From: Haliotis rubra
Lineage: Eukaryota
DNA length: 64,000 nt
Reading direction: 5' to 3'
Assembly: GCF_003918875.1 (NCBI RefSeq)
Contig: NW_025765725.1
Span: forward strand, 992,001 to 1,056,000
The position numbers and the translations under genes were made by a program. The number at the start of each line of letters is the position of its first letter. Positions within the stretch are counted from its first letter, which is position 1. The notes under the pieces were generated by a model, which searched no databases, was not told where the DNA came from, and saw only the letters and a list, made by a program, of their open reading frames with translations. Below are positions 1 to 59,530 of this stretch, one piece after another.

Positions 1-1632
1 CCATTGCTCATTTGGTGAAGCCATTTGTCCATAGCTCAGTTGGTAACAGCATTTGTCCATAGCACAGTTGGTATGTCCATTGCTTTTACGAATCAGCACC
101 GATTAACTACTATATTTGTGACACCCGCACATTTGTCATCGTATTACTTTTGTTGTTCTCACATGTACATATAAATGTTCCTCATAATTAAGAAGTTGAC
201 ATCCATGCATTTTCAACCTAAATGCATACTAAAAGCAGGATTACCTGTGTATGTGACTACTAAGTTCAGTACTAAATGCTAGCAATTATAAGTATAGTGA
301 CACGACGAGTGTTTTCGCACCTTTGTATCGCAGCATTCCACAGCAAGTTAACACGATGCAGGGCAAACTATCAAATGGTTAAGTTTGTAAATATCAATAA
401 CATCAATAGACTCAGACACCACACCCAGACCACGAAACTTTGTCACGTTTGAAGTGTTAATTTGACATGCACGATTGCGTTGCCTTCGCTTAGAAACTAG
501 TTAGACAGCTGGCCACACTGGAAAGACCGGGTGAAGTTATCTGGCAGTTTAAAAATGTTCACGCTTTGTGAATTATTGCAAATATATTATCGTGTTGAAT
601 ATGCTTTATCCATACTTATTCGTACGTCTGGGAAACATGGGAGGGGAAAGAGGGAGGAGTAAAGCCATTAATGCGAATTTGTGACTATTTTATTGAAGTG
701 TTTTTGTTTATATTCATGTTTTTAATGCTAATAAGTTTCACGAAGTGTGTTTGTTTTGTTTTGTTTATATTTTATTATATTTTTAGTACTTATAAATTTC
801 ACGAAGTGTTTTTGTTTTGTTTATATTTTATTATGTTTTTAGTACTAATAAGTTTCATCAAGCATGCAGCCAATTTAATGAATATTTCGTGTAGTTTAGT
901 CAAACCAGTTCGATTACCCATTTAGAAATAAATGCTTTGTCTTGAGGCTCAATTTGTGCAGCTAAGGTGACGATTTCTGGCAGAGATCCTTTTCATTTAA
1001 TACAATTTGCAAAATAGGGACAGTTTATTCGGATTGTGTTAAATTAGTTGTGCGTTGATTTTTTTCAAAAATATATTCTTCTCATTACACAGCCAAATAT
1101 AACGATAAAGACATAAATCAAGGTGTGCATTACCAGAGGTATTCCCATTTCTGTCTGAAGTCGTCTAAGAAACCCCATTGCATGTAGGAGAAATGACCTG
1201 AAACGACCTGTCTCAAGTTAAAAGTGCTTTAGGACTGTCCAAGATCGGTAACAGGACCTGCCACTGGCGTTTAGACCAGATATTCAATCTAAATAAAACT
1301 AGGCTTCGTTTTGCAGTTCTGAACTACACTATTGTTGTTAGCGAAGAATTTCCTGAGTGTCATGGTGGCGTTTGCCCTGGCCACGTGTGTGGAACCCTGG
1401 ATTGGGGTTGAGGTTGGGGTTGGGGGGGCCCCCAGACATAACACACGTGCATCACCAGTGGAGAAAGGGATATTACGCTTCACACTATGCTTGAGTTACA
1501 CTATGATTAGATAAAGGTGAACAACTATGGACAGCACAGACCTGCAGTGTTTTAGAGGACAAGGACAGTAAGCAATATCCTCGATGGACATCGTGCAGAC
1601 ATACAACACTTCAGCTATTGTCACATGTATAT

Positions 1633-2165
1633 AGATGGATGAACGGATGGGTGGATGGGTGGGGGAATGGTTGGACAGATGGATTGATGGGTGACCGGAT
1701 GGATGGGAGGGGGAGACGGTTGGACGGATTGATGGATGTTTGGACGGATGGATTTGAGAGGATAGACGGTTGGAGGGGTGGGGGGATGGATTGATAGACG
1801 GATGGAGGGGTGAGGGGGTGGATGGATGAAGGATGGGTTGGGTGATGAGCGGATGGATGGTAGGACGGATGGTTTGGTGTATGGACGGATTGGTGGATGG
1901 ACGGATGATGGGTGAGGGGATGGACGGATAGATGGGTGAGGGGATTGAGGATGGTTGGATGGGTGGGGGATGGATGGGGGAGGGGATAGATGGTAGGACG
2001 GATAGATTGGTTGATGGACGGATTATTGGATGGACGGTTGGATGGGTGAGGGGATGGATTGGTGGATGGAGTTTTTTCGCACCTTTTTGTATCACAGCAT
2101 TCCACAGCAAGTTAACACGACGGATGGATGGATGGGTTGGTGGGTGGGCGGATGGGTGAATAGAT
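1633..2165 (+). repeat. Degenerate (GGAT/GGAC)n microsatellite
   Basis: Visible tetranucleotide periodicity. Confidence 0.9.
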
Positions 2166-3461
2166 GAATGATGCACCTGTTGACTGATAGATGATAGAAA
2201 GAGAGTGAACTCTGTATATAGAAAAGGGCTCTGCCATGCTAGGTACAGTTGCATGTTCGTATCGAGAGCCACCTGTTCGTTTTAGGCGAACACGAAGCAT
2301 CAGTATTCGATATTGATTTTTTAACATGCCCATAATGTCTTTGGGTGACTATTGACAGTCTTTTGTCGCATTTATTTGAATGACCAACCCTAATCAATAT
2401 TTTCGTACGGGTTTATATTTCATAGGCCTCCCTCCACCCAGACTCAACCACCAGCACACAACTGTATCTATCCTAGGGGCAATTCCTTAGACATTCTGAA
2501 GCGTAGATACATGGGAGAACTGTAGCCTTTACGGACGTGTTTACCCTTTTCGCGAAAACCGATGCCATCACCTACATTCACCGATCAGTTCAAATGATTT
2601 TCAGCATCATTTGTCTTAGACTTTCCCGGGAATCTGTGACGACAGATAATTACAAATATTTTCTGGAATTATATATGATTAATGCGTGTTCATACAAGCC
2701 TCCATCACATTCTCTGCAGGTTTGTTCGTGTGAAAAAGCATTAGAGCAACGTAAGAGAGCCTCACAGCAACTGACATTATTTCTTCTGTCTGACATGTCT
2801 GTGAACTTGCCCGGGATAGTGTACACCAATAGTTATCTATTAATCTGGGGTAGAGGTTACACCGTGTCACGATGACCTAGGGAGGCGTAATGCAGTCAGG
2901 GTCTTCTGCACAGGTTCTCCAGGTATGCCAATGCACATTGTCTAGTCTGTATGTCGTGTAAATGCATATTCAGATCTTCGGGTATTCATCCGATTATCAT
3001 GTTTATGTGTGTACAAAAATACCTTTGTCATGATTACTTAAGTGTGTTTGAGGCCCAAGTAATACACGTATAAACTTGCAATGAGTGACATAGTGCGTTC
3101 CTCAAGAGTCCATATTTCACGATTACCATACAACATATCTGATTAAATCTACTTTAAATATCCAGGACGTTGGAATATTTTTCTCGACATAATAAAAATA
3201 ATTTAATTTAATTTCAGTGAGAGTTTTCATTAACATATAGCTCGAACGGAAGACTAATCGTTTGAGTATTGCCATAGCTCGTTGTCAAATGAAACATTAA
3301 TGTGAAATATATTATTACTGAGTGAATGGATGATGAATCAAGAATTTGATGAACCCCTTTCATTGCTTCATTTGTTTCGGCTGGGATTGTTTACATCTAT
3401 ATGTTTAATACATTAGTCTTAACTGCAATATTTAGGTTTTATAATGTTTATTTTTACTATT

Positions 3462-4104: not shown

Positions 4105-5704
4105 TTGCGGTCAATCTGAAATGCTTCTGGCTAAATGAAACGATAGCCTTGTTAATTCATATATATTTCAAATATCAAAGTTACTATATTTTTGTGTGTG
4201 AAATATTAGTGAAATATTTGGACTATAACACTATGTTATCAATACATATTCTGTGTGCTACTCATTTCGGCACGTGTTTTGTGTGTACGTATTCGTATTT
4301 AAAGGGGTTTCTTTATTCATCTGATGTTAAACGTCAAATGCCAAGTGAACGAGACTGGAAAAGCCTAAACTGTCATGACAAGATGTTGGATACACACGTG
4401 ACTTGAAATCTATGTAATTAGTGTCTGACTTTGTATCAGTTGGCAGATAATGCAGCTAAATATTAACCAAATGTATTTGTTGATCAGAAATTGATCAGCT
4501 GATCCGACCCCCAGGGAAGATGATTCCGAAAATCTCCTCTCGACTCAATCAGTGACTCTCGATCAGTTTAACGGCCGATTTAATGTATTAGAAATGTATT
4601 TTTCAAACAGGAAAACGGGAAATATACAGAGACATGGATGTGACTGGGTGCGCTTCTACTTTAAGTTCTGATAAAGCTGTCAGTTATTTGCAATCAACCT
4701 TTCAACAGTGATATGCAAATGTAACATTTGTTTGGCAAACCTTTTGTAAAATCAGATGTGTAACAAATAGTCGTGAATTTACGCCATTTTGTACTTTTAA
4801 AGAATAAAAAAAATATTTTAAATCATCAAAATTATGTAACCATTGAAATTTAAGTAACTAAATCATTAATAATTAATGTAAACGACATGCATTATATACG
4901 TTGATGACGTAGATGTGCAATAGTAGAGCATGTAATCGCACAAACATGCAGATTGTCTTAGAAGGTCGGATGGATGGTGTTCGATAACACACAAAACAAT
5001 TATTTTGTTTATATTTAATGTGAAAAAACATATTTCACAACCTTCATTAATAATCCGTTACTCTTCAAACTGCACGGATTTGTCTGTGTATGAGTGTCTC
5101 TTGTAGAGGTGTATCTTGTGACGTCAGATGTACTTATATGGTAGTAACAGGAATTATCAGTGTTTTCTACAAAAGAATATTAATTCATTATGCACTGATG
5201 ATGTTGAATATCCAAATGAATATATTAGCTACAATTTGCGTGTTTTTAAATTTTGAACTTTTGTCGTTTGTTTGTACGTTTTGTCTCCAGCCAGCTTCAT
5301 ACCAGGCTTTCCGCGCTGGAAAGTGATGATGATGATGATGATGATGATGAATACCGCCACAGTGGCCCCTGAACAGTTCATTCATAATCATTGTTTAATC
5401 TGTCATCTAAGACAACATGACCTATCGGTTTTAGCCAGTGAAACTCTGTGACTGTTAGCTGGTCTTACCGGGATAATATTCTAAGCCGCCATGTAGCTGG
5501 ACTATTGCTGAGTGCGGCGTTACTAAAACAACACACAAAATCCAAAGCGTTGCACTAAAATAACCGATAACGAATCATAGAAACGGGTTACTGAAAATCC
5601 AAAGACTGTCAAAGATGCCGTTGGACATAAATTTACATCAGGCATGCTATGCACACACACATGATTATCATAAGGTTTCCAAAATATAGCTGTCTAAAAA
5701 GCAG

Positions 5705-5836
5705 NNNNNNNNNNNNNNNNNNNNNNNNNNNNNNNNNNNNNNNNNNNNNNNNNNNNNNNNNNNNNNNNNNNNNNNNNNNNNNNNNNNNNNNNNNNNNNNN
5801 NNNNNNNNNNNNNNNNNNNNNNNNNNNNNNNNNNNN
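5705..5836. other. Assembly gap (N run); other gaps at 45817-45958 and 46623-46790
   Basis: Runs of n. Confidence 0.99.
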
Positions 5837-6584
5837 GCACGTACGCCATCGTACAAGCACACACTCATATATATTTGTTACTACTTTTCAAGAGGTTTTC
5901 AATCAAATTTAGAGCTATTATAAGTTCGTTAATACCTCTGATTTTCCAACCCACAATGTTTATCTCCTAACTGATCGTCGTACGGCTTCTACCGGTGCTT
6001 GCCAAACCCACACAAACATGTGTTAAGATAGATGACTATCGATACCTGGATCGAATTACAATCAGTGGTCGCAACTGTCCATGTCATAGGTTACGATTGT
6101 CGGTGTTAGTATTCGTCTTCTTGATAACAAAGATAATAACATAGTTGTAACTGTTGGTCAGTGACCATGTTTGTGTCCATCACTACAATGGTCAGTGGTT
6201 ATGATTGTATCTTTATCTGCTCATATCAGCGACAGTGGTATATGTCGTGTGTCTTACTAAATGTAAGATTATGTGTCTACAGTGGTCACAGTGTTCACTG
6301 ATTATAACATGTCTTTGATTATAATTACCAATGCTATGTATTCTGGTATCCAATTTCGTGTTATACCAATAAAATACATACCCCATGTGTTAGTCTGCTG
6401 AAACGGAATGCCTGTCGAGTTCCTGTATCTCAGGAGAGAGAAGGAAGAAAAACGTGGCACATTGAAATCGGCTCTCCGACACGTCAGTTGCCAAACATGA
6501 ATAGCAATGTCTGCTTCATATATCTCTCAGAATTCGGAAAAAAATAAAACGTACCATTTGCTTGCAAATAAAATGACATGTAAT

Positions 6585-6824
6585 CAGGGATGGAAATAAC
6601 CCATTGCCCCACGTCCGAGTCAAGTGATTTTTCTGTCGGGCAAGCAAATTCGTATATCACACTGTACCGGCGTCCAGTTGACTTTCCACGGTTAATTATG
6701 TTGTTTATTTAAAATATCCAACAAGAAAACGGTCGGTATAGTGGAAAGATTATCAGGGCAAGTGATTTCACATGTGCCACTGTACCGGAGTACATTAGCA
6801 ATTTTAAAGTCATTTCCACCCCTG
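6585..6824. mobile_element. hAT-type MITE
   Basis: TIRs cagggatggaaataac / gtcatttccacccctg; flanks catgtaat / catgtagg; partial copy at 29665-29830. Confidence 0.75.
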
Positions 6825-6874
6825 CATGTAGGAGTTGAAGTTAAGGGACCGTGCCCCAAGCCTCGTGCATAGAT

Positions 6875-7131
6875 GGGGCGGTGGGGTAGCCTAGTGGATA
6901 AAGCGTTCGCTCGTCATGCCAAAGAGTTGAGATGAGTAGAGTTGGGCTTTACGTCACATCGGCTTTATTCAGCCATATAGTGACGAGATCAAGTCACAAT
7001 TATAGACATTTCATGCCAAAGACCAGGGTTCGATTCCCCACACGGGTACAATGTGTGAAGCCTATATCTGATGTCCATCGTCGTGATATTGCTGGGATGT
7101 TTGTAAAAGTGTCGTAAATCATACTCACTCA
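6875..7131 (+). mobile_element. SINE A with a nested antisense retroposon tail
   Basis: Outer TSD ctcgtgcatagat. Inner insertion ~6925-7010 has TSD tcatgccaaaga and carries a reverse-oriented …ggctgaataaagccgatgtgacgtaaa… tail. Confidence 0.85.
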
Positions 7132-7189
7132 CTCGTGCATAGATAACATTTCAATCATGTTCTGAAACTCTGATTTGTTTCTTCTCCAG

Positions 7190-8796
7190 GTGGTGCCGGG
7201 GTACTGGGGTTTGAGAGAGGAAGAGTCGCCTCCCTGGAAGAGTCGCCATCTGGCCACTGAACCTCAGATGCAGACGTTTGAGCTTGAGATGGAAGAAGAC
7301 CAGCCGCTCGATCTGAGCATGAAGCCACGCGAGCTCGTGGAGTCCCCCTTCCCCGGGCAGGTGCCTTCTGGGGAGAAACATCATGGACAGGACTCTCCAC
7401 TGTGCCTCATCAAAGACTGTGGATGTAACAACCATGGTACCCGACAGCGATCGGGTGGCGGGAACTCGGTGTATAATGGCGGGAAGTATGGGCCCCTCCA
7501 TCAAATGGAGATCGTCCTTTGTTCCCCGATTCCCATAGTGAAATGACTTTAAAGTCGAGATTTATTGATAGAAACGGTGCGTACGAGAGCCAACACATGT
7601 GCTATGACCGTGTTGCTGTGCCAAAGCATGACATGTGTAGGCAGAGTGAAGTGGAGGGGGCCTTCCACTATAATCGGGCCACTAACGACGAAGAACGGAT
7701 GGATACTAACGCAGAACACGTCCCGTTTGAAGCTATTTGTCCAGCTGCTCAAAGCAAATTCAAACCAGTGTTTCAGACTTGTGCCAGAACCCATATCGAT
7801 CACCCCAGTGTCAACTACAGTCTTTCGTCAAAGTATTATGAAAGTCGCGAGCACTGTGCTCAGTCGTTCCTTGATCTCAGCAACTTTGGAACAACGCGGG
7901 GTAGCTTGTGGAAGCCTTGCGGAAACATCGAAGAAGGGTGCAGACCTATACGACGACCTTGGCACGGCGACATGAACGCATCTGCTCCTTGGGGACGACC
8001 CTGTAGAGAATGGAACAACAGGGACTTGGCAGAGGGACCCAGGATGCATTGGAGACCCTTCGTGGACACACCGACCTCCCACGGCCATCCTTCGTCTCCA
8101 ACCACAGCGCACCAGCCTTCCGTTGACACACTAAAATCCACAGGTATTGGGAGTGCGGTTCCGAAATCAACCACAGCAGGTTCGCTCTCGGGGACCAGCA
8201 AATCCACCCAGCCTAATTCAGGAAGAACGGCGCAGATATCCACTGGCGCCTCTTGTTTACAAACAACAAGGACTGTAGGGCACTCCTTCGCCTCAACTGT
8301 TCCACTCATCTCTAAGTCTGCAGTCCCACCCAGATCGAACTCTCACTCTTCTTCACTGTCGGCTATCTCAAGGAGCCCTGGTTCGCCGATTTTGGTCCCT
8401 AGAGCCCCGTACACGTCCATTCGAGTGACGCGGAGTCCCAAAACATTCCACAACGAATCGGTTCGGACAATACAAGATCCTGATCTGAGAGAAGCTTCGC
8501 TCAGGCGGTCGCACGATGGCAGCAAACGACATTTGTCCGGGAAACTGGAAGCGCAGGAAAAGGAAAACATCGATTTGACGGACAGTGGAACGGCTACTTC
8601 CGGTGTGGCTACATCCGGGGGCTTGAAGATGCCCGCCCTGGACTATTTGATCTCAAAGGTTCTGGTGGAGCGGATTGATATTCCTTTTAAGCCGTGTAAC
8701 ACGGAGATCAAGAAGATCTATAATGGAGAGAGTAAAGGAAGACTACGCCTTGTTGATCTCATAGAGCTGCAAGTTGAAGAGAGTCTTAAAGCGTAA
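7190..8796 (+). CDS. Terminal coding exon of an uncharacterised, largely disordered protein with corepressor-binding motifs; one -1 frameshift near 7490-7496
   Basis: Pyrimidine-rich acceptor tgatttgtttcttctccag ends at 7189 (phase 0); first in-frame ATG is 7268. ORF 7175-7546 contains DQPLDLSMK and overlaps the 425-aa ORF 7519-8796, whose frame is open from 7477. Adding one C to gggcccc (7490-7496) fuses them (…GKYGPPPSNGDRPLF…). GC-richer than flanks and non-repetitive; poly(A) signals lie downstream. Confidence 0.75.
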
Positions 8797-9541
8797 TGAC
8801 GTTGTTGTTTAGGGATTGTGTTATTTGTTTTCTTTTCGTCTTTTGACCAATGGAGCAGGTTTATGAGCAGTATTGATGATTAACTCGGTGATGGCTGATG
8901 CGACTCAACCAGGGTATACTTGTGTATGTGTATGACTGTACATTCGTGATGTGACCGACTTGTATAATGGCAATTGACGTAACACTTCTAACAAGGAATT
9001 GTTGCCTGTGATAGCGACATGTTTCACTGCCCGAAAGGTTCAAATCCTTCCACTTGGGATCATATCTCATGGTTATTTGCGCTCGCGCCGTTCACCTTTG
9101 AAGGGAGTTTAGGATTTCTCAGTTTTTGATATATGTATCTTGCCATTGAGTGCTTCTTATTAAGGTGACTGTTATACACAGAGAAATATGTCGTATTTAT
9201 TAATGTAACTTATTATTTTGTTTCAGTTTAGATTGAACGACAGATGTGTGTGTCGTCTGGTTGCTATAAGAACTACTTCTGTGACGTCACTTTGACGTCA
9301 CAGCGATAGACTCGGTGGCGATTGGTTAGTCTCCCGTGTCTTTCATCCATGTACCCAGATCTATTAACAAGATTGAACATGTGATCTGCGAGTCTACCAC
9401 TCAGTGAGGTTTAGGTCGTCAGCAGTGCAATGAAGCTGGAGTGCAATATTTTCATCAAATCTCACTTTTCTATCAAGGTAACTACCGGAGTATTTTAAGG
9501 AAACCAATCTGTTTGGTGTTCATGTTTTCAATGGCTATGCT

Positions 9542-9557
9542 ATTAAATGAAAATAAA
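9542..9557 (+). promoter_or_regulatory. Candidate polyadenylation signals (ATTAAA, AATAAA) of the 7190-8796 gene
   Basis: attaaa at 9542-9547 and aataaa at 9552-9557, ~750 bp after the stop, followed by T-rich sequence. Confidence 0.4.
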
Positions 9558-9841
9558 AGTATTACGTACACAAAGTGTCCACTTATTTTTATCACTTCAA
9601 GTAACTGAGTCCAACGAGATCAGCCATTCAGTTTGCCATGTGTAACATTATTGGTTGATTACTTGCTTTGACTTAATGTGATGTACGAAAGTTCCCTTGT
9701 GATTCTTTTCTTTGTTAATAACGCCACAGTCAGCAATATCCCAGCTATATGGCGGCGGTCTGTAAATACTAGAGTCTGGACCAAACAATCTTGTGATAAA
9801 AAACGTGAGCATTGATCTAAGCAAATGGGATACGATGACAC

Positions 9842-10114
9842 CAGTGTTTACCCTTTACCCTGAAAAGCTGCAGGCCCTATGGACCCAAAACCATTAAAAG
9901 TTGTGGGTCCTGATCAGAATGTGTAGGCCCTATATTTTAATATGGAAATAATACAACAACGTATGGTATGGATTTACAACTTATGGAAATAATACTCTTA
10001 GTTACTGGGGATGAAAACACTGTTGGCCATAAAGACCTGCAGAAAAGAAAAGCTGTAGGCCCGAGTGGTTTTCAGTTGGATTCGGGCCTAAGGACCGACG
10101 TTAATTTCGAACTT
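9842..10114 (+). mobile_element. Dispersed MITE-like repeat
   Basis: Reverse-complement copy at 19332-19556. Confidence 0.7.
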
Positions 10115-10144
10115 TGGATAACACGTGTCAGCCATATTGGCCAG

Positions 10145-10251
10145 GGTGCCGTTGTACAAAACAACTTTAGCGCTAAGGCTACTTTAAGTCTATGTTAAAG
10201 TATGGGAGTTACGGTCACCTTAGCGCCAAGATCGCTTTGTACAACGGCACC
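10145..10251. mobile_element. PIF/Harbinger-like MITE
   Basis: TIRs ggtgccgttgtacaaa / tttgtacaacggcacc; 3-bp TSD CAG. Confidence 0.75.
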
Positions 10252-10709
10252 CAGGACAACAATTGTGATCTGTAACAACAATGGGTACTTCCGGTTACTC
10301 ACAGATATCGTCAGTATTACATAGCAACCTTTTCTTTCTTTATTTGCTGAAAAGATTACTCTCTGCTGCTCACTAGTTCAGGATCTCGTAGCAGTGATTG
10401 TATTTGTTGCCAAATATAATACCGTCATATTTGCGAGGTGTTTCTAAAAGAAGTGGCATTACTGGATATTAACTGTTCGTTTTGTTGGTGCAATTTATCA
10501 TCAGTGTGGAAAATATTGACATTGATACATGTGATAACTCACGAGACACTTCATTTTTTCATAGCAAGGACTTTTGTCGTAGCTCACAAAATAACGTGAT
10601 AATTGCACTGCCGGGATCCTTTATAGAATCTCACAAAACTGCAATAATTAATTACAAGGATGCTATTGTGTAACTAGGAAAAACACCGTTATTTCATAGC
10701 AAGGATTTA

Positions 10710-11107
10710 TAAGTCCATTCCATCTACATGCATGCTTAAAGCGCTTTGTTTTTCCCTCGATCTCTTGAAGTTAAACTCAAACGGCACATCGTATTTTCAA
10801 TATCAAATCAGTGGGGAGCATACACTAGACACCAAGTAAATGTGATATCCCATACATACGAGGTACTCATTCACAGCTGGGTGGACTGGGACACATAGTC
10901 ACAGTACTTTGTCCAAGTTTTACTGCACGTTGCTGTACCCGCAACTAGGTGTTTGCACGTATTCATGTGGCCACCATCTGGTCATTTACCAACGGATTCG
11001 TGGGTACTTTAGGTGCACTGGGTTGTGTACTGTACACTCGGGGTTGTGACAACACTGAAAGCTGGATCACTAGCCTGGCGCCTTAGACAGCTCGCCCGCC
11101 ACGTCCA
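10710..11107 (-). mobile_element. tRNA-Leu-like headed SINE with CORE-like segment, internally deleted
   Basis: Reverse complement matches 30408-30590 (head gcgagctgtctaaggcgccagg) plus 32929-33235 (…cccagtccacccagctgtgaatgggtacc…). Confidence 0.7.
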
Positions 11108-11125
11108 CAAAGGATCCTTTATAGT

Positions 11126-11290
11126 TGTAGTATTGTCAATGAGTTGTACAGCCTATATTGTCTCCGTGATTACTTTATGTGTATCACGTGACTTGTGTAC
11201 TACGTCAGAATAAAGCGGGTGAGTGGAACTACTCGCATGTCGTGTTGTCCCTTGTATGTGTTGACGAAGAGAGCCCATGAAGATACTACA
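11126..11290 (+). repeat. 5' LTR
   Basis: TG…CA termini with an 8-bp inverted repeat; internal AATAAA; matches 16230-16394. Confidence 0.95.
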
Positions 11291-11291
11291 A

Positions 11292-11304
11292 TGGCGACGA
11301 GGAT
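11292..11304 (+). other. Primer-binding site complementary to the 3' end of tRNA-Ser(GCT)
   Basis: TGGCGACGAGGAT begins 1 nt after the 5' LTR and is complementary to …AUCCUCGUCGCCA. Confidence 0.8.
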
Positions 11305-11343
11305 TGAATCTGTCGTATTGCTTCAAGGGAAGGTGGTATACAC

Positions 11344-11551
11344 CAGGGGCGTAGCTGCCATATAGGCAAAAAGGCAATTGCCTACACATAATTTTGTAAA
11401 AAAAATATTAAAAAAAAGAAAATGATAAATTTGAACGAAAAATGTTACAGGTGAATTTATTTCAACATGCTGAAAGCATGGATATGTACGTATAATAATT
11501 GCATTCAAAACTTTTTGCCTACACATAATAATTGGCTCAGATACGCCCCTG
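11344..11551. mobile_element. hAT-type MITE nested in the Gypsy 5' leader
   Basis: TIRs CAGGGGCGTAgCTG / CAGaTACGCCCCTG; flanks gtatacac / (g)tacacac fit a near-perfect 8-bp TSD. Confidence 0.8.
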
Positions 11552-11872
11552 TACACACGCAACATGAACTATGTTAGTGATACGAACTCTCACTAATTGG
11601 TGGAACTTTCAAACAGAACTTTGAGTGAGAACTTTTGCACTCGTGAAGACGCCATTTATTCTCGTGCATCACATGTATCTCACCTGTCAGTGTCACGGTA
11701 TGTCGCAAGTCTGGTTTACAGTCTACACCATGTCTACAGTATGTTTTCAGCATGAACATTTCTCATCATGAACTGGATATTGAGAACATTTTCCATATTT
11801 TGCTTAGTCGTACTTGCCTTGACATTCACAAACTTTGACTTTTTCAAATTGTGTCAACAGTGTATAGCCAAT

Positions 11873-14800
11873 ATGGTTGACCCTGAACCTGTCGCAGCAC
11901 CTGTGAACTTTAATCTGCATTTACGTCCTCCACCAGCTCTAAATATGAATCCCACTGATCTGAGTAATGAATTTACGGTCTGGATGGAAACCTTCTCTAT
12001 TTATGAGGTTGCTAGTGGTCTAGAGACGCAAGGGGACAAGGTTCGAAGGGCTACTTTGATGCATTGTCTAGGCACTTCATGTCAAAGAATTTTTCTTACA
12101 TTGCCTGGTCAGAAAGATACTTATAATAGCGCTATTTAAAGCTGTTTTGAGTGCATACTTCAATCCAAAAAGAAACGTTGTGGCAGAACATTATAGATTT
12201 CGTTCTCGAGCACAAGGGTCAGATGAGAGTATTGATAATTTGTTACTGATTTGAGAGAACTTGCCAAGACTTGTAATTTTGGTGCTTTGCATGATGAGAT
12301 GATTAGAGATCAGATTGTTGAGAAATGTGCATCGAAACATTTGAGAGAGAAACTTCTGCTGAAAGATGATTTAACTTTAGATTCTGCTCTTAAGGTTGCG
12401 AGGCTTTATGAGATGGCCATGGAGAATTCTAAGGCTATTGCAGGAATTTCTGTTAATAAAGTTGATTTTAACTTTACTCAGTCTGGTAATCAGCCTTATA
12501 ACCGGTGTTACACATGTGGTTTTTCAGATCACAAGGCTTCTGATTGTGGTGCTATCAACGCTAACTGTCTGTTCTGTAAAAAGAAGGGTCATCTGGCTAG
12601 GGTATGTAAAGCTAGACAGTCAGGTGGTAGTTCAACCTCATGTAGTAGGTCTAGTTCTACATCAAGGTTTCAGTTAGGTAAGTCAGTTACTGATAAGCAA
12701 GGTCATTCAAAGCAGAAGGCTGGTAGAAAGAAGAAAAAGGTTGGTAAGGTTAAATTTCAGCAACAGAATGATAAGCAGAAATTGAATGCAGTGTTGATTG
12801 ATGAGACATGTTCTGAGTCAGATTCTTTTTCAGAAGATGCAGAGTTTGTTTATTATCTTGATTCAGATTTGTTTACTTCTGTGAATGTCAATGGTAGAGA
12901 TTTGGAGATGTTCTTAGATTCAGGTTCATATAGGAACATTATTTCAGAGGTGACTTATGATAGATATTTCAAACATTTTCCACTTTCTTCTACAGCTAAA
13001 CATTTCAAAGCTTATGGTCAGAAGCAGCCAATGGAATGTCTTGGTTATTTTGATGTTCTTTTGAAAGTTGTTGACAATCAAGCTGAAGATAGGATTTATG
13101 TCATGTCTGGTGATGAGGTATCTTTGCTTGGAAGGAAGTCTAGTCTTGAGTTGTCTTTGCTTCAGATCAACATCAATAAGGTCAGTTCTCCAACTAACCT
13201 AGATCATCTGTTTGATGAATTTTCAGATGTTTTTGATGGCTTGGGTCAAATTAAAGATTTTACTCATACTATCATGGTTAATGAGTCAGTCTCACCGGTT
13301 ACACAACCACTCCGTACGTTATCCTATTCTATGGTGGAAGCGGTCAATTCTGAGTTAGACAGGATGATTGATGATGATATCATTGATGAAGTACATCGTG
13401 CTACACCTTGGGTTTCAAATATACATTGTGTTCCGAAACCAAATACTTCTGAGATTAGAGTTTGTTGTGATTTACGTGAGGTCAACAAGGCTGTTGTTCG
13501 TGAGAGGTTTCCTATTCCTACTGTAGATGATACACTCTATGCTATGAAGTCAGCACGTTACTTTGCCAAGCTTGATTGTAAACGGGGATTCTGGCAGATT
13601 TTATTGGCAGAGGATTCTAGAGATTTACACACAGAGGTATATTTAGATTCAAAAGACTTCCTTTTGGTTTGAATTCAGCTTCTGAAGCATATCAAAAGGC
13701 TATGAACTATGTTTTCAATGATATTTCAGGTTTGGAGAAATATATTGATGACTTGATTTGCTATGCAAATTCTCTAGAACTTGAAATTTTGCTCAGAAAA
13801 GTTTTCAAAAGATGTAGAGAGTGCAATTTAAAGCTCCACAAGGACAAGTATAAATTTGGCATGACAGAGATAGAGGTTCTGGGACATGTAGTTTCTTCTG
13901 AAGGTGTTAGACCTAATCCTAAGAAGGTATCAGCTGTTGAACTAGCTAATCCTCCAGGAAATGTTTCAGAGTTACGTTCATTCTTAGGACTGTGCAATTA
14001 CTTGATGAAGTTTATTCCTGGTTTTGAAGATCTTTGTGAGCCATTATGTCTTCTCACTAGAACTGGAGTGAAATGGAAATGGAATGATGTTTGTCAGTCA
14101 GCATTTGTATCACATGTTTTGCTTTCTATGATGTTGAGGCTCCAACTATTGTGGTTAGTGATGCTAGTCCGGTTGATTTGGGTTCAGTTTTACTTAAAGA
14201 GCAAGACGATGGCAGTTTTCAACCTATTGCGTTTGCTAGTCGTTCCTTGACAGAAACTGAGCGTAGGTATTCACAAATAGAACGAGAAGCTTTAGGATGT
14301 ATCTGGTCTGTGGAACATTTCCACAAGTATCTTTGGGGAAGGAAGTTTGTATTACAAACTGATCACCATCCGTTAATTCACATGGTTCACTCAAGAGAAA
14401 ACAGTTCAGTTACCCCTTAGAATTCAAAGATTCGCTTGGAAGTTACAGGGATACGATTTCCAAATTAGACACATAGCTGGCAAATCTAATATTGCAGACT
14501 TTTTCTCAAGACAATCTTTATCATCCAAGAAAAGTGACAATGTGGCTGATTATTATATCAGATTTGTGGTTGACACATGTGTACTAGATATTGATTCAAT
14601 TACAAAGGATGAAATCAGAAACTGTTCATCAAGAGATGGAGAAATTGTGAAAGTATTAAGTGCTATAGAAACAGATGACTGGAGTGATGTGTCAGTGCAG
14701 TATCTGAAGTTCAAGAACGAACTCTCAACGTATGATTCTATTCTTTTGAGAGGAGAGAGAATAGTGATTCCTCGATCACTAAGGTCGAAAGTTTTGAGTA

Positions 14801-16021
14801 TTGCTCATGAGACACATCAAGGCATAATACGCACTAAACAATTCCTTCGGACTAGATTCTAGAAATATGGATTTTGACGTGGAACAACTTGTTAACAAGT
14901 GTACAACCTGTGTTCTGAATCAACCTTTAAGAAATGACACTCCATTACAACCTGTAGATCCAGCTCCGAGACCTTGGTCGAAAGTCGGTATAGACATCGT
15001 TGGACCTATTGACTCAGCCTATGTGTTAACGTTGATAGATTACTTTTCTTCATATCCATTTGATGTTGTGATTAAAGACATTACATCAAGTGCTATCATT
15101 GAAGTTTTGGAAAGAATATTACCTGAACATGGTTTCCCAGAAGGCATAGTTTCAGATAATGGTCGTCAATTTGTGAGTGCACATTTTTTGAAATTTTTGA
15201 GAATGGCAGGGATTGAACATATTCGTTCTTCGCCATATTGTCCAAAGAGCAATGGAAAGATCGATCGTTTCCATAGATTTCTGAAGAAAGCATTCCGTTC
15301 TGCATCAACTGATGGGAATGACTGGAAACGACAGTTACCGAGAATTCTACAAATGTATAGAGCTACTCCATCATCGAGCTACTGGTGAAAATCCAGCAAT
15401 GTTATTGCTTCATAGGAACAATAAAACCGAATATCCAGTACTGTGTTCATCGAAACCTGATCCATTATTATCAAGAAAACTCTGTTATGCAGACAAGATG
15501 AAGACATATGCAGATGTGAAGAACAGTGTAAAACATCATACGTTTAGTGTTGGTGATATAGTGTACATTGCCAATTTTGTGCGGGGTAAGTTAACTCCAA
15601 CGTACAACCTGTAAAACATGTGATCATCAACAAGAAACAACGTGATACATTCCAGATCGTGAACTGTGATACAGGTGTTATCAGTGTAAGAAATGCTAAA
15701 TTTCTTAGACATGCTCCATGTGAGGATCCAGTGAACTTTGATAATGTTGAGATTCCTGAAGATATGATTCCGAGAAATTTGGTATTAGACAGAACTGAGT
15801 CACAAGTACAAGCAACTTCAGTACCTACAGAGAACTCTACTGTTCAACAGGATAACTTGTGTGCTGATTTAGCTGTAGATCCCAGTACTAATGTGACTGA
15901 AACTGAAGAAGAAAATGAACTGAGTGGATCTGCTACACAATCAGCAGATACTGCTTGTTTAAGAAGATCTCGAAGATCACGTCGTGCTCCTGCATATTTG
16001 AAGGACTATGTAAAGAAATGA
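11873..16021 (+). pseudogene. gag-pol of the Gypsy element, broken into about 8 fragments
   Basis: Two CCHC knuckles (CYTCGFSDHKASDC, CLFCKKKGHLARVC), protease LDSGS, RT YIDD, RNase H DAS…YSQIEREAL, integrase AHETH…CTTC and GIDIVGP…SDNGRQF, C-terminal LRRSRRSRRAPAYLKDY. Confidence 0.93.
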
Positions 16022-31202: not shown

Positions 31203-31964
31203 TTAGCAACATATTTTTTTGACATTGGCCCAAATCAACTCAATTGGGTTCAATTCTGCGTGGTAAGGAGGAAGACGTAGTACATCATGGCCATGTTGTT
31301 TCAACATAGTGTCTACTCTATAGACAGGGCCCGATTTGTTGGATTTTGCCAGACACAACAGTTCGGCTTTGAGCATTTTATCGTCAAATGCAATATTGTG
31401 CCTTTGTAACCAAGCTTTGGTATCATCTTTTCTGTTAGCCGTTGTTGGACATTTGTCCACTTGCTTGCTGTGGTATGGCGCATTATCCATAACAATGACG
31501 GAGTGGGGTGGAATATGTGGGATCAATGTGTCCTGTAGCCATTTGGAAAAATTATCAAAATTCATCTCGTCATGATAATCTGCTGATTTGAGCTTTAAGT
31601 CAAATACAAGTAAAGCATTTGGTACAAAACCGTTTTCGGACTCTGCATGAACAACAATAAGCCGAGGTCCGGTACCGGACGGACGCTGAACCCCATTTAT
31701 CACAACCTCACCATCAAGCTGCCAACATTTTGGGACAATGTGGTGTACATGCAACCATGTTTCATCGATAAAGATGATTGTTCGATCTTCATCTCGACAC
31801 TTTTTTATTGCACGTAAGTATTGCATGCGCTTTGCAACGATGTCTTTTCGTTCTTTTAAAACCTTACGATTTGACTGCGTTTTTCGCCACCTAAACCCCA
31901 TGTCTTTCAGATTATTTCGAAAACTTTCCTTTGAACCCTGGTAATGCGATTGGTTTCTTGCCAT
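31203..31964 (-). pseudogene. DD81E transposase core; decayed N- and C-terminal parts flank it
   Basis: FIDETW…VIVMDNAPYH…LRLPPYHAELNPIELIW, with 81 residues between the second D and E. Confidence 0.88.
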
Positions 31965-33410: not shown

Positions 33411-34025
33411 ACCCGTGAAGATCCGGGTTAGAATTGATCTTCAGCTACCCATGCTTGTCGTAAGAGGCGACTAACGGGATCGGGTGGCCTAGCTCACTGA
33501 CTGGGTTGAGACATGTCATCGTATTTCATTTGCGTTCTATCGATGTTCATGAGGTGAGGTGAAATTATGGGTTTAACGTCGTGCTTGAGAATATTTCGCT
33601 CATATGACGACGTGCATGCGTGTGTATGTATATGTGCGGCTGCTTGTACAAGCCCAGACTTAAGCTGGTTTTATAGTGCTAGACCACTGAGATACCATGC
33701 CGCAGTGAAGCATGAACACCCCACTCAGACACATTATACTGACTCCGAGCCGACCAGTCCTTGTTGTACCAATTAATGCCGAGCGCCGGGCATGGACCAA
33801 CAAGTACCATATTTTAACGTCTTTCGATATGACGCGGTCTGGAATCGAACCCGCGACCATCCACTCTCCGGGCGGACGCTCTAACCACTACACCACGGAG
33901 GCGGTCCTCGATGTTCATGGAGTTGATCCCTGGATTGTCTGGTCCAGACTCGAATATTTACAGACGGCCGCCATATAGCTGGAATATTGCTGGGTGCGGC
34001 GTAAAATTAAACTCACTCACTCACT
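33411..34025 (+). mobile_element. SINE-like family B interrupted by a family D SINE
   Basis: TSD cactttactaa; the nested element at 33552-33907 has TSD tcgatgttcatg. Confidence 0.88.
33552..33907 (-). mobile_element. SINE family D, nested copy
   Basis: Near-identical reverse complement of 39113-39468. Confidence 0.88.
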
Positions 34026-58200: not shown

Positions 58201-59530
58201 TGTTTGGTGGGTGTGGGGCCAGGTGTAGGTGTTGTTTGGTGGGTGTGTGAAGTAGGGTGTAGAGTGTTGTTTGGTAGGTGTGGGGTAGGGTGTAGAGTGT
58301 TGTTTGGTTGGTGTGTAGGGGTAGGGTGTTTGGTGTGTGTGTAGGGTGTAGAGTGTTGTTTGGTAGGTGTGGGTGTAGGGTGTAGGTGTTGTTTAGTAGG
58401 TGTGTGAGTAGAGGTGTAGGTGTTGTTTGGTGGGTAGTGTGTAGGAGTGTAGATGTTGTTTGGTGGTGTGTGTGGGTGTTGTTAGATTGTGTGTGTGTGA
58501 GTAGGGTGTAGGTGTTGTTTGGTGGGTGTGTGTGTAGGAAGGTGTAGGTGTTGTTTGGTGGGTAGTGTGTAGTAGGGTGTAGGTGTTGTTTGGTGGGTGT
58601 GTGAAGTAGGGTGTAGGTGTTGTTTGTTTGGTGGGTGTGTGATAGAGTAGGGTGTAGGTGTTGTTTGGTTGGTAGTGTGTAGGGTGTAGATGTTGTTTGG
58701 TGGGTGTGTGGGTAGGGTGTCGGTGTTGTTTGGTTGGTGTGGGTGTAGGGTGTAGGTGTTGTTTGGTGGGTGTGTGGGTAGGGTGTAGGTGTTGTTTGGT
58801 AGGTGTGTGAGTAGGGTGTAGATGTTGTTTGGTGGGTGTGGGTGTAGGGTGTAGGTGTTGTTTGGTTGGTGTGTGGGTAGGATGTAGTTGTTGTTTGGTA
58901 GGTGTGTGGGTAGGGTGTTGGTGTTGTTTGGTGGGTGTGGGTGTAGGGTGTAGGTGTTGTTTGGTGGGTAGTGTGTAGGGTGTAGATGTTGTTTGGTAGG
59001 TGTGTGGGTAGGGTGTAGGTGTTGTTTGGTGGACGTGGGTGTAGGGTGTAGGTGTTGTTTTGGTGTGTGTGTGGGTAGGGTGTAGGTGTTGTTTGGTTGG
59101 TGTGGGGGTAGGGTGTAGGTGTTGTTTGGTGGGTGTGTGAGTAGGGTGTAGGTGTTGTTTGGTTGGTGTGTGGGTAGGGTATAGGTTTTGTTTGGTGGGT
59201 GTGGGGGTAGGTTGTAGTTGTTGTTTGGTGGGTGTGTGGGTGAGTGTAGATGTGGTTTGGTGGGGATGAGGGTAGGCTGTAGGTTCTGTTTAATGGGTTG
59301 ATGGGTAGGGCGTAGGTATTGTTTGGTGAGTGGGGTGTAGGTGTTGTTTGGTGGATAGGGTTTAGGTACTTTTTGTGGGTGTGCGGGTAGGGTGAAGATG
59401 TTGTTTGGTGAGGATGTGGGTAAGTTGAGATCTTTTCTGTTTCTGGGTGAATAGTATTTATTTGTGGGTGGGGGTGTTGGTTTGTGTTTGTGCACGTGGT
59501 GCGGACGTGCATGGGTTGTAGGTGTGTTTT
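55262..59530 (+). repeat. 33-bp G/T-rich minisatellite array, ~4.3 kb
   Basis: Unit gtagggtgtagatgttgtttggtgggtgtgggg; indel-rich centre. Confidence 0.95.

What the first reader, a model, noticed from the sequence alone, without database searches (positions are those of the whole stretch)
7190..8796. Orphan disordered protein combining CtBP, Groucho-like and CoRNR-like motifs: candidate multi-corepressor adaptor
Seen: PLDLS followed by MK (7304-7318) in an acidic context, plus weaker FLDLS (7867-7881) and NIDLT. WKPC (7909), RRPW (7951), PWGRP and WRPF (8050-8061) cluster within ~50 aa. After a long Ser/Thr/Pro linker come two amphipathic motifs, LDYLISKVL (8638-8664) and LVDLIELQV (8749-8775). 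No DNA-binding or catalytic domain is visible in this exon. Known: PxDLS binds CtBP; WRPW/FRPW/FKPY-type peptides bind the Groucho/TLE WD40 domain; Lxx[I/H]Ixxx[I/L] CoRNR boxes of NCoR/SMRT bind unliganded nuclear receptors. Hairless and Ripply are DNA-binding-free adaptors built from such motifs. Inference: a lineage-specific scaffold linking nuclear receptors or another helix-binding factor to CtBP and Groucho. I do not recognise it as a named gene.
Basis: partly seen in the sequence, partly recalled or inferred. Interest (0 to 1): 0.75.

Follow-up and report, generated by a model that had tools for sequence, protein, structure and literature searches.

The report
Mollusc-only disordered protein with corepressor motifs
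This is the single coding exon of a real, transcribed abalone gene from a previously undescribed family, seen so far only in molluscs, of mostly disordered proteins that always carry a CtBP-docking motif at the start and a small helical domain at the end, so it is a credible but untested candidate adaptor for gene repression.

Summary
As assembled, though, 7190-8796 is two reading frames. PLDLS lies in one and everything else in the other. Contigs from three public runs add one C after 7492, which restores a single 509-codon ORF (ATG 7268 to stop 8796). Transcript-like contigs break at the acceptor at 7189/7190 and end after AATAAA near 9570.

The protein is not an orphan. A profile of its last 65 residues finds 43 cluster representatives, and every named one is a gastropod or bivalve "uncharacterized protein". 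None has a Pfam domain, and no solved structure resembles it.

- **Conserved family-wide:** N-terminal PLDL[ST] (nearly every member with an intact N-terminus) and the C-terminal three-helix domain that contains both "CoRNR-like" strings.
- **Conserved in several lineages:** one Groucho-type motif, WRPF in Haliotis, Y/H/FRPF in caenogastropods, FRPY/F in two heterobranch-type members and WRPY in clams.
- **Haliotis-only:** WKPC, RRPW and PWGRP. FLDLS is not a conserved CtBP motif.

Best reading: a corepressor adaptor known so far only from molluscs, binding CtBP firmly and Groucho plausibly, with an unknown partner for the C-terminal domain. The nuclear-receptor idea has no support. No binding was tested.

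The parts
7188..7189 (+). AG splice acceptor of the last exon
   Evidence: Follows a polypyrimidine tract. Three transcript-like contigs stop matching exactly here and continue with 25-187 unmatched upstream letters (table 8). The DNA-like contig X1 rec4 runs through colinearly.
7190..9570 (+). Terminal exon: leader, whole conserved CDS and 3'UTR
   Evidence: X3 rec19 covers 7188-9570 and X8 rec26 covers 7188-9535. ATTAAA lies at 9542-9547 and AATAAA at 9552-9557.
7190..7267 (+). In-frame leader without a stop: 5'UTR or a weakly conserved N-terminal extension
   Evidence: The Haliotis gene models extend upstream through it (P0001, P0002). It varies more than the sequence after Met. Patella, Lottia and Gigantopelta proteins start 12 residues before PLDLS. 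The upstream exon at G000:C835:953241-953330 has an in-frame TGA.
7268..7270 (+). Probable start codon (MQTFELEMEEDQPLDLS)
   Evidence: Position relative to PLDLS matches Patella, Lottia and Gigantopelta (Met at -12). Inferred, not shown.
7304..7324 (+). PLDLSMK, canonical CtBP-binding PxDLS motif in an acidic context
   Evidence: PLDL[ST] is present near the N-terminus in nearly every full-length member (PLDLR or PLNLR in three; one clam model starts after it), usually followed by K/R within 1-3 residues. AF2 confidence rises locally (pLDDT 78).
7403..7435 (+). CLIKDCGCNNH: conserved C-x4-C-x-C(-x2-3-H) motif
   Evidence: Present in Haliotis, Patella, Gigantopelta, most caenogastropod-type members, two heterobranch-type members and all seven scallop-group members. 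Absent from the clam group. Function unknown.
7493..7496 (+). C-run one base too short in the assembly, causing the apparent frame break
   Evidence: 'Put in behind 7492: C' in all covering contigs of X1, X3 and X8 (table 4). Orthologues read GPPPSNG here.
7867..7881 (+). FLDLS: part of a conserved hydrophobic S-x-L-x-L-S patch, not a conserved CtBP motif
   Evidence: MAFFT aligns it with SASSTLLMLSN, SSLLLLSN and SSLLSLS in caenogastropod-type sequences.
7909..8001 (+). WKPC, RRPW, PWGRP: Trp/Arg/Pro strings specific to Haliotis
   Evidence: Present in P0001, P0002 and the window only. Enriched against shuffles (P=0.0001) but not conserved outside the genus.
8050..8067 (+). WRPFVD: Groucho/TLE-type [WYF]RP[FY] motif
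   Evidence: Matches YRPFED, HRPFED, FRPFDD and YRPYE (caenogastropod-type), FRPYHD and FRPFNS (heterobranch-type), and KKRKNLWRPYDS in 22 of 23 clam-group members. WRPF in Runx1 keeps TLE3 binding (PMC13043292).
8068..8625 (+). Ser/Thr/Pro-rich disordered linker
   Evidence: Ser 12%, Pro 8%, Thr 7% over the whole protein. AF2 pLDDT 42-53 and no secondary structure. Alignable only within the genus.
8626..8793 (+). Conserved C-terminal domain (K-M-P-ALDYLISKVLVERIDIPFKPCNTEIKKIYNGESKGRLRLVDLIELQVEESLKA), three predicted helices
   Evidence: 29 invariant columns among 12 gastropod sequences. The profile finds 43 representatives at E<=1e-3; in the family-type hits (one, P0042, is a repeat protein with short internal matches) the match ends within a few residues of the C-terminus (one model runs on 18 residues). 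AF2 gives helices at 459-470, 481-487 and 497-510 with pLDDT about 70-95. No Pfam, PDB or Atlas match.
8794..8796 (+). Stop codon TAA
9542..9557 (+). Polyadenylation signals ATTAAA and AATAAA
   Evidence: Sequence. Transcript-like contigs end at 9535 and 9570.

Best explanation
Window 7190 to about 9570 is the last exon of a single-copy abalone (Haliotis) gene and holds the whole conserved coding sequence: ATG 7268 to TAA 8796, 509 codons once the assembly's missing C at 7493-7496 is counted. It encodes a member of an undescribed protein family whose named members are all gastropods or bivalves. The protein is intrinsically disordered except at its two ends.

Proposed mechanism (inferred, not shown):
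- The invariant N-terminal PLDLS-x-K motif docks into the PxDLS cleft of CtBP.
- The WRPF motif binds the WD40 pore of Groucho/TLE. It appears as YRPF, FRPY or WRPY in other lineages and is lost in some.
- The invariant C-terminal three-helix domain attaches the protein to a still unknown partner, most likely a DNA-bound transcription factor or chromatin protein.

On this reading the protein works as a DNA-binding-free corepressor adaptor. The gene, its transcription, the family and the motif conservation are shown. All binding events and the repressor role are inferred from what is established about PxDLS and WRPW/Y motifs.
For: - **Gene reality.** Orthologues are 93-95% identical in H. asinina and H. 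cracherodii. Substitutions against a sister species split 11 synonymous to 5 non-synonymous. Contigs are spliced at 7189/7190 and end after AATAAA. The gene is single copy.
- **Frame break.** It is an assembly error (table 4).
- **Family.** 43 representatives at E<=1e-3 in 1.84 billion proteins, the family-type matches all lying at the C-terminus. Named members come from Haliotis, Patella, Lottia, Gigantopelta, Nucella, Littorina, Batillaria, Biomphalaria, Bulinus, Physella, Bradybaena, Candidula, Ylistrum, Mercenaria and Mactra.
- **PLDL[ST].** Present in nearly every member with an intact N-terminus.
- **[WYFH]RP[FY].** Present in Haliotis, seven of eight caenogastropod-type members, two heterobranch-type members and 22 of 23 clam-group members.
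- **WRPF as a TLE ligand.** Runx1 carrying WRPF still co-precipitates TLE3 (PMC13043292).
- **Partner present.** Groucho/TLE genes exist in this genome.
- **Architecture.** Only the PLDLS region and the C-terminal domain are confidently modelled.
- **Nuclear signals.** Strong basic clusters (KKRK, KRRKR) occur in the bivalve members.
- **From my own knowledge.** PxDLS peptides bind a hydrophobic cleft of CtBP (E1A, ZEB, the CtBP/BARS peptide structure). WRPW/Y and FKPY peptides bind the TLE WD40 pore, including at internal positions as in Ripply and Brinker.
Against: - No binding was tested, and no CtBP sequence could be brought into the complex predictor.
- The Groucho-type motif is absent from Patella, Lottia, Gigantopelta, the scallop group and most heterobranch-type members, so it is not essential to the family.
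- Whether the clam WRPY and the gastropod YRPF/WRPF share an origin or arose separately is unresolved. The disordered regions do not align reliably.
- The published TLE data on WRPF concern a C-terminal motif; here the motif is internal.
- The Haliotis protein has no obvious classical NLS.
- The C-terminal domain has no identified partner or known fold.
- Expression time and place are unknown.
Confidence: 0.55

Rival explanations
1. The protein is a dedicated CtBP partner only. It could be a CtBP-dependent repressor or a regulator or sequesterer of CtBP, comparable in logic to vertebrate RAI2. On this reading the [WYF]RP[FY] strings do not bind Groucho and serve another role or none.
For: PLDLS is the only linear motif kept family-wide. 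The Gro-type motif is missing in several lineages, and the alignment cannot prove its homology between classes.
Against: The motif is nearly invariant (22 of 23) in the clam group and recurs in three gastropod lineages with the same core and an acidic tail. The chance of one such tetrapeptide per protein is about 0.015. WRPF is a competent TLE ligand.
Confidence: 0.2
2. The C-terminal three-helix domain itself binds DNA or nucleosomes. The protein would then be a sequence-specific or chromatin-bound repressor rather than an adaptor.
For: The domain is a small, confidently modelled three-helix unit at the C-terminus. It is the most conserved part of the protein. Many DNA-binding modules are three-helix bundles (own knowledge).
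Against: The last and best conserved helix, LVDLIELQVEESLKA, is acidic and hydrophobic rather than basic. By a hand count the domain has about 10 basic and 9 acidic residues. No HTH, homeodomain or Myb match appears in Pfam at E<=10 or in fold searches (best Z 3.8).
Confidence: 0.1
3. One reading: LDYLISKVL and LVDLIELQV are CoRNR boxes that dock on unliganded nuclear receptors, making the protein an NCoR/SMRT-like receptor corepressor.
For: LDYLISKVL fits a loosened L-x-x-[ILH]-I-x-x-x-[IL] pattern, with chance about 0.017 per protein. Both strings lie in amphipathic helices.
Against: Both strings are helices of one co-conserved domain modelled with confidence, not isolated peptides in disorder. 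Across the family, position 4 is L/W/M/C (one R) rather than the I/V/H of true CoRNR boxes. Nothing else links the family to nuclear receptors.
Confidence: 0.05
4. The conserved motifs serve something other than transcriptional repression, such as a cytoplasmic scaffold or a degradation signal. On this reading the resemblance to corepressor motifs is coincidental.
For: No functional data exist. Short motifs are degenerate. The Haliotis protein lacks a clear NLS.
Against: An exact PLDL[ST] core followed by a basic residue, kept across two mollusc classes, is the textbook CtBP ligand. The bivalve members carry strong NLS-like KKRK and KRRKR clusters. A second independent corepressor-type motif co-occurs with it.
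Confidence: 0.1

Closest known systems
Hairless / S-CAP (arthropod Su(H) corepressor adaptors)
   Same: Long, mostly disordered proteins without a DNA-binding domain. They combine a CtBP PxDLS-type motif and a Groucho-binding motif with one short conserved docking domain for a transcription factor (PMC6777938).
   Different: No sequence relation was found. Hairless and S-CAP are arthropod-restricted, their docking domain (the SBD) is internal, and their CtBP motif is C-terminal. Here the CtBP motif is N-terminal and the docking domain is at the C-terminus. In molluscs Su(H) itself carries Gro and CtBP motifs (PMC6777938), so Su(H) is not an obvious partner.
Ripply (vertebrate/chordate Groucho adaptor for T-box factors)
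   Same: A small adaptor without a DNA-binding domain, carrying an internal WRPW-type motif plus a conserved C-terminal partner-binding domain. From memory, its FDYLYS...FPVQ stretch loosely resembles LDYLIS...IPFK here.
   Different: The Pfam Ripply model (PF14998) hits neither this protein nor this locus in a whole-genome search. Ripply has no CtBP motif and is far shorter. The resemblance is recalled from memory and not supported by any test.
Brinker, Hairy/Hes, Knirps and ZEB-type repressors that recruit both CtBP and Groucho
   Same: They use PxDLS plus [WF][RK]P[WY] motifs in one polypeptide to recruit two corepressors.
   Different: Each of those has a recognised DNA-binding domain. None is detectable here.
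LCoR / E93
   Same: The CtBP motif has nearly the same wording (PLDLTVRK or PLDLSAK, from memory; the clam members read PLDLTVRR or PLDLTVKR), and it lies near the N-terminus of a largely disordered corepressor.
   Different: LCoR and E93 end in an HTH_psq domain and carry an LxxLL receptor box. No HTH_psq hit and no LxxLL occurs here. The similarity is limited to the short motif.
NCoR/SMRT CoRNR boxes
   Same: An amphipathic L-x-x-[L/I]-I-x-x-x-L helix.
   Different: Here the helix is part of a folded, co-conserved three-helix domain, and the diagnostic position varies outside the CoRNR consensus.

Membership tests
CtBP-binding PxDLS-motif proteins (functional class) | P-x-D-L-S core with a basic residue within 1-3 positions after it | tested here: met
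   PLDLSMK at 7304-7324. The same core occurs in nearly every full-length family member.
CtBP-binding PxDLS-motif proteins (functional class) | Motif lies in an accessible, disordered region | tested here: met
   It sits 13 residues from the probable N-terminus, and AF2 shows no secondary structure around it.
CtBP-binding PxDLS-motif proteins (functional class) | Physical binding to CtBP | not testable with these tools
A pull-down or ITC is needed.
Groucho/TLE WRPW/Y-motif ligands | Aromatic-[RK]-P-aromatic tetrapeptide, classically ending in W or Y | tested here: inconclusive
   Haliotis has WRPF, ending in F. Clam members have canonical WRPY; other gastropods have YRPF, HRPF, FRPF, FRPY and YRPY. 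Runx1 carrying WRPF keeps TLE3 co-IP (PMC13043292).
Groucho/TLE WRPW/Y-motif ligands | Conservation of the motif in orthologues | tested here: inconclusive
   Kept in Haliotis, caenogastropod-type members, two heterobranch-type members and the clam group. Absent in Patella, Lottia, Gigantopelta, the scallop group and group C. Positional homology between classes is not provable.
Groucho/TLE WRPW/Y-motif ligands | Binding to the TLE WD40 domain | not testable with these tools
   Gro/TLE genes exist in the genome, but no complex was modelled.
CoRNR-box nuclear-receptor corepressors (NCoR/SMRT type) | [IL]-x-x-[IVH]-I-x-x-x-[IL] helix in a disordered receptor-interaction region | tested here: not met
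   LDYLISKVL has L at the [IVH] position, and the family shows L/W/M/C (one R) there. Both strings lie inside a three-helix domain modelled at pLDDT about 70-95.
Ripply | Ripply homology domain (Pfam PF14998) together with WRPW | tested here: not met
   No PF14998 hit at E<=10 in ten family members or E<=1 in the window protein. The whole-genome search with PF14998 does not hit this locus.
Hairless / S-CAP | Su(H)-binding domain, with ELM2/SANT in chelicerate S-CAP | tested here: not met
   No Pfam family of any kind hits. According to PMC6777938 the family is confined to arthropods. The SBD itself was not searched with a dedicated model.
LCoR / E93 | C-terminal HTH_psq domain and LxxLL box | tested here: not met
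   No HTH_psq hit and no LxxLL in any of the first twelve members.

The most novel reading that the evidence does not exclude
This is the founding member of a phylum-restricted adaptor system. Its invariant C-terminal three-helix domain would be a new docking module for one specific mollusc transcription factor, bridging that factor to CtBP in all lineages and to Groucho in some. That would make it a mollusc counterpart of Hairless or Ripply that arose independently. The gain and loss of the Gro motif between lineages would then be a natural experiment in rewiring corepressor use.
Probability: 0.35. Interest if true: 0.65.

Novelty: new variant of a known kind. Interest (0 to 1): 0.45.

Why it matters
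Adaptors built from short motifs, such as Hairless, S-CAP and Ripply, show how lineages rewire repression without changing DNA-binding proteins. So far they are known from arthropods and chordates. This locus points to a comparable, independently built protein family, so far seen only in molluscs, that has not been described in anything I could search. Its members are annotated only as uncharacterized, hypothetical or, in one automatic name, 'atrophin-1-like'.

The family offers three things:
- a clean test case for motif gain and loss (Groucho motif present or absent by lineage, CtBP motif fixed);
- a new conserved 55-residue domain whose partner can be found with a simple bait screen;
- a correction to this assembly, a one-base homopolymer error that splits the gene.

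If the motifs do not bind, the gene is merely one more conserved disordered protein of unknown function.

Tried and rejected
- **Intron hypothesis for the frame switch** (GT near 7437, AG near 7540). Rejected: three runs show an extra C and no joint there, and orthologues read straight through.
- **Family and sequence scans.** Pfam on both window pieces and on ten family members found nothing relevant; the only rows are CH-domain hits at E about 0.03-0.05, below cut-off. The PDB sequence search gave only noise. Rfam on the whole window found nothing.
- **Fold searches.** The C-terminal domain alone (model pLDDT 70) and the full-length model were searched with Foldseek against PDB, VIA-align wide and the ESM Atlas. 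Best results were Z 3.8 and TM 0.52 on unrelated bacterial proteins, so there is no usable match.
- **ESM Atlas feature search.** The best hit was adenovirus E1A at 0.76, below the tool's usable range and probably driven by the shared PLDLS. I did not use it. A second Atlas search on a clam member's C-terminus gave no usable hit.
- **Homodimer of the C-terminal domain** with complex prediction. The tool returned 'no answer' (score 0.00), which is not evidence either way.
- **Ripply relationship**, a resemblance recalled from memory. The Pfam PF14998 genome search did not hit the locus.
- **'Atrophin-1-like' label** on the Littorina homologue. I take it to be a compositional auto-annotation. 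No Atrophin Pfam hit appeared in the members scanned, though the Littorina protein itself was not scanned.
- **Upstream exons as the source of a known domain.** They encode only W/R/G-rich, non-conserved sequence, and one has a TGA.
- **Literature.** Searches for six locus identifiers, the Lottia gene tag and its UniProt accession found no paper.
- **Earlier scan notes.** Only an unrelated SINE note at 33411-33485 turned up.
- **Taxon of two unnamed groups.** Group C (P0027, P0029) and the short divergent hits (P0023, P0028) could not be assigned to a taxon.
Full report
**1. What is in the sequence**

The window is G000:C835:992001-1056000 of a 1.38-Gb genome. The closest proteins are from Haliotis asinina and H. 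cracherodii at 93-95% identity, so the organism is an abalone.

As assembled, however, 7190-8796 is not one open frame. The frame that holds PLDLS (7304-7318) ends at TGA 7544-7546. The frame that holds every other motif opens only at 7477.

I laid contigs of four public runs on 5900-11800. The covering contig of X1 (DNA-like, the closest match), X3 and X8 each inserts one C behind 7492, in the run CCCC at 7493-7496. With five Cs the reading is ..GGKYG-P-PPSNGDRPLF.., exactly as in both Haliotis orthologues. The break is a homopolymer under-call. A second such error lies at 9096. An intron explanation is excluded, because no joint was reported there.

**2. Gene model and expression**

Contigs X3 rec19 (2558 nt), X8 rec26 (2537 nt) and X17 rec13 stop matching at 7188. 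They carry 173, 187 and 25 more letters on the upstream side. The DNA-like contig X1 rec4 instead runs colinearly from 7036 to 9756. That is the signature of splicing at the AG at 7188-7189.

The two long transcript-like contigs end at 9535 and 9570. This is just after ATTAAA (9542-9547) and AATAAA (9552-9557). The runs are only guessed to be RNA, but their spliced 5' break and their 3' ends next to these signals fit transcripts.

The N-terminal extension of the H. cracherodii model maps to two exons, 20 kb and 46 kb upstream (G000:C835:979260-979382 and 953241-953330). The more distant one has an in-frame TGA in this genome. These extensions are W/R/G-rich, differ between Haliotis gene models and carry no Pfam domain. 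Patella, Lottia and Gigantopelta proteins start 12 residues before PLDLS.

I therefore take ATG 7268 as the conserved start. That gives a 509-residue protein encoded entirely in this exon. This start is an inference.

Against the sister species seen in X3 and X8, the listed CDS differences split 11 synonymous to 5 non-synonymous. This indicates purifying selection even across the disordered part. The gene is single copy.

**3. The family**

The word-index searches found gastropod relatives that share only the two ends of the protein. I built a profile of the last 65 residues (A2) and searched it against 1.84 billion cluster representatives. It gave 43 hits at E<=1e-3. One (P0042) is an unrelated-looking repeat protein with short internal matches. 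In the rest, apart from fragments, the match lies at the C-terminus of proteins of roughly 300-960 residues. A further profile search added more clam sequences.

Every hit that carries a name is a mollusc:

| Group | Named genera |
|---|---|
| Vetigastropods, limpets and Gigantopelta | Haliotis, Patella, Lottia, Gigantopelta |
| Caenogastropods | Nucella, Littorina, Batillaria |
| Heterobranchs | Biomphalaria, Bulinus, Physella, Bradybaena, Candidula |
| Bivalves | Ylistrum (scallop), Mercenaria and Mactra (clams) |

All are labelled uncharacterized or hypothetical, apart from one automatic 'atrophin-1-like' name. Several unnamed hits come from run assemblies and environmental metagenomes. Two that I fetched are single uninterrupted ORFs. 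Two small groups (P0027/P0029 and P0023/P0028) have no taxon attached.

None of the family members I scanned has a Pfam domain. No paper mentions the locus identifiers I searched.

**4. Which motifs are conserved**

- **PLDL[ST].** It is present near the N-terminus of nearly every family member with an intact N-terminus. The exceptions are PLDLR or PLNLR in three sequences and one clam model that begins after the motif. K or R usually follows within three residues. In the scallop group the motif begins at residue 4 (MEQPLDLS).
- **C-x4-C-x-C(-x2-3-H).** This motif (7403-7435) follows 20-50 residues later in most gastropods and in all scallop-group members. It is absent from the clam group. Its role is unknown.
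Only WRPF (8050-8061) has counterparts elsewhere. Caenogastropod-type members have SPRPFYRPFED, FHRPFED, IYRPFED, FFRPFDD and LYRPYE. Two heterobranch-type members have SLFRPYHD and SLFRPFNS. In the clam group, 22 of 23 members have KKRKNLWRPYDS. WKPC, RRPW and PWGRP occur only in Haliotis. The motif is absent from Patella, Lottia, Gigantopelta, the scallop group and group C.
- **Homology of that motif across classes.** The disordered regions do not align reliably across classes. I cannot show that the clam and gastropod motifs descend from one ancestral site. The alternative is repeated origin, which would also argue for function.
- **FLDLS.** It aligns with SSTLLMLS and SSLLLLS in caenogastropod-type sequences. 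It is a conserved hydrophobic patch, not a conserved CtBP site.
- **The C-terminal domain.** The two 'CoRNR-like' strings are helix 1 and helix 3 of the C-terminal domain. That domain has 29 invariant columns among 12 gastropod sequences.

**5. Structure**

With the 43-row family alignment, AlphaFold2 models residues 1-455 without secondary structure. pLDDT is mostly 40-55 there, with a local rise to 78 over the PLDLS block. The last 55 residues form three helices (459-470, 481-487, 497-510) with block pLDDT about 70-95. The domain modelled alone gave the same helices at pLDDT 70.

Foldseek against PDB, VIA-align wide and the Atlas shape search found nothing above noise; the best Z was 3.8. 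A homodimer test gave no verdict.

**6. How it most likely works**

- **Shown.** The gene is real, spliced and constrained. Its named relatives are all molluscs. The architecture is an N-terminal PLDLS motif, a variable disordered body and an invariant C-terminal helical domain.
- **From established knowledge.** PxDLS followed by a basic residue is the canonical ligand of the CtBP cleft. [WFY][RK]P[WY] peptides bind the Groucho/TLE WD40 pore, and internal copies work in Ripply and Brinker.
- **From the literature.** Runx1 with its terminal WRPY changed to WRPF still co-precipitates TLE3, even after phosphatase treatment. It behaves in vivo between WRPY and WRPW (PMC13043292). A final Phe is therefore compatible with TLE binding.
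- **In this genome.** Groucho/TLE genes are present.
- **Inferred.** The protein recruits CtBP in all lineages and Groucho in those that keep the motif. Its C-terminal domain tethers it to an unknown partner. A DNA-bound factor is the most economical guess, because no DNA-binding domain is detectable and helix 3 is acidic.

I put about 0.8 on CtBP binding, about 0.5 on Groucho binding by the Haliotis motif and about 0.55 on the adaptor model as a whole.

**7. Comparison with known systems**

The protein works like Hairless, S-CAP and Ripply, which are motif-built adaptors. It belongs to none of them:
- there are no Pfam hits at all;
- the Ripply model misses the locus genome-wide;
- Hairless and S-CAP are arthropod-restricted;
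- mollusc Su(H) carries its own Gro and CtBP motifs (PMC6777938), which makes Su(H) an unlikely partner.

The wording of the CtBP motif resembles that of LCoR and E93, but this protein has neither an HTH_psq domain nor an LxxLL box. The CoRNR reading fails its own consensus across the family and ignores that the strings sit in a folded domain.

**8. Verdict**

The motifs are real, the ORF is real only after the assembly error is recognised, and the protein is not an orphan.

The CtBP part is strong, the Groucho part is plausible for one of the four strings, and the nuclear-receptor part is unsupported.

This is a new, undescribed family, apparently restricted to molluscs, of a known functional kind. 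It is moderately interesting because of the clean pattern of motif conservation and loss and because of the new C-terminal domain. Function remains untested.

Noticed in passing
window 6690-7110: A very high-copy SINE-like repeat lies directly upstream of the splice acceptor. Summed contig depth reaches about 1.4e7 in the DNA run, with many variant joints around 6897-7044, and there is a B-box-like GGTTCGATTCC near 7030. ARAGORN calls no tRNA.
   Followed up: partly
window 9096: A second one-base homopolymer under-call: all three runs insert a T. This suggests systematic homopolymer errors in the assembly.
   Followed up: no
window 9643-9839, 10037-10233, 10825-11218: Further high-copy interspersed repeats flank the 3' end of the gene, with depth of 1e5-1e7 in the DNA run.
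   Followed up: no
window 12251-15388: A decayed LTR-retroelement pol region: RVT_1 split over two ORFs (12251-13672 and 13669-14250) and an integrase core at 14867-15388.
   Followed up: partly
window 31203-31964 (-): A DDE_3 transposase remnant (E 5e-14).
   Followed up: no
window 55271-59341: A G-rich 33-bp minisatellite of about 120 copies at 76% match, with GC skew up to 0.92. It creates long spurious ORFs on both strands.
   Followed up: partly
window 1496-2272: A strand-biased repetitive stretch that translates as PSIHPS-like repeats (GC skew 0.26). It is probably a tandem repeat, not a gene.
   Followed up: no
window ~5700-5850: A run of N, either masked or an assembly gap.
   Followed up: no
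P0036-P0046 (clam-group homologues), about 45 residues before the C-terminal domain: An extra internal copy of the helix-3-like motif (SLIDLIEEIEADA, compare MLDVIELQVE). Two members scored two stretches against the profile.
   Followed up: no
P0006, P0012 (Nucella lapillus): Nucella has two paralogues (569 and 961 residues), both with PLDLS, YRPFED and the C-terminal domain. Haliotis has a single copy.
   Followed up: no
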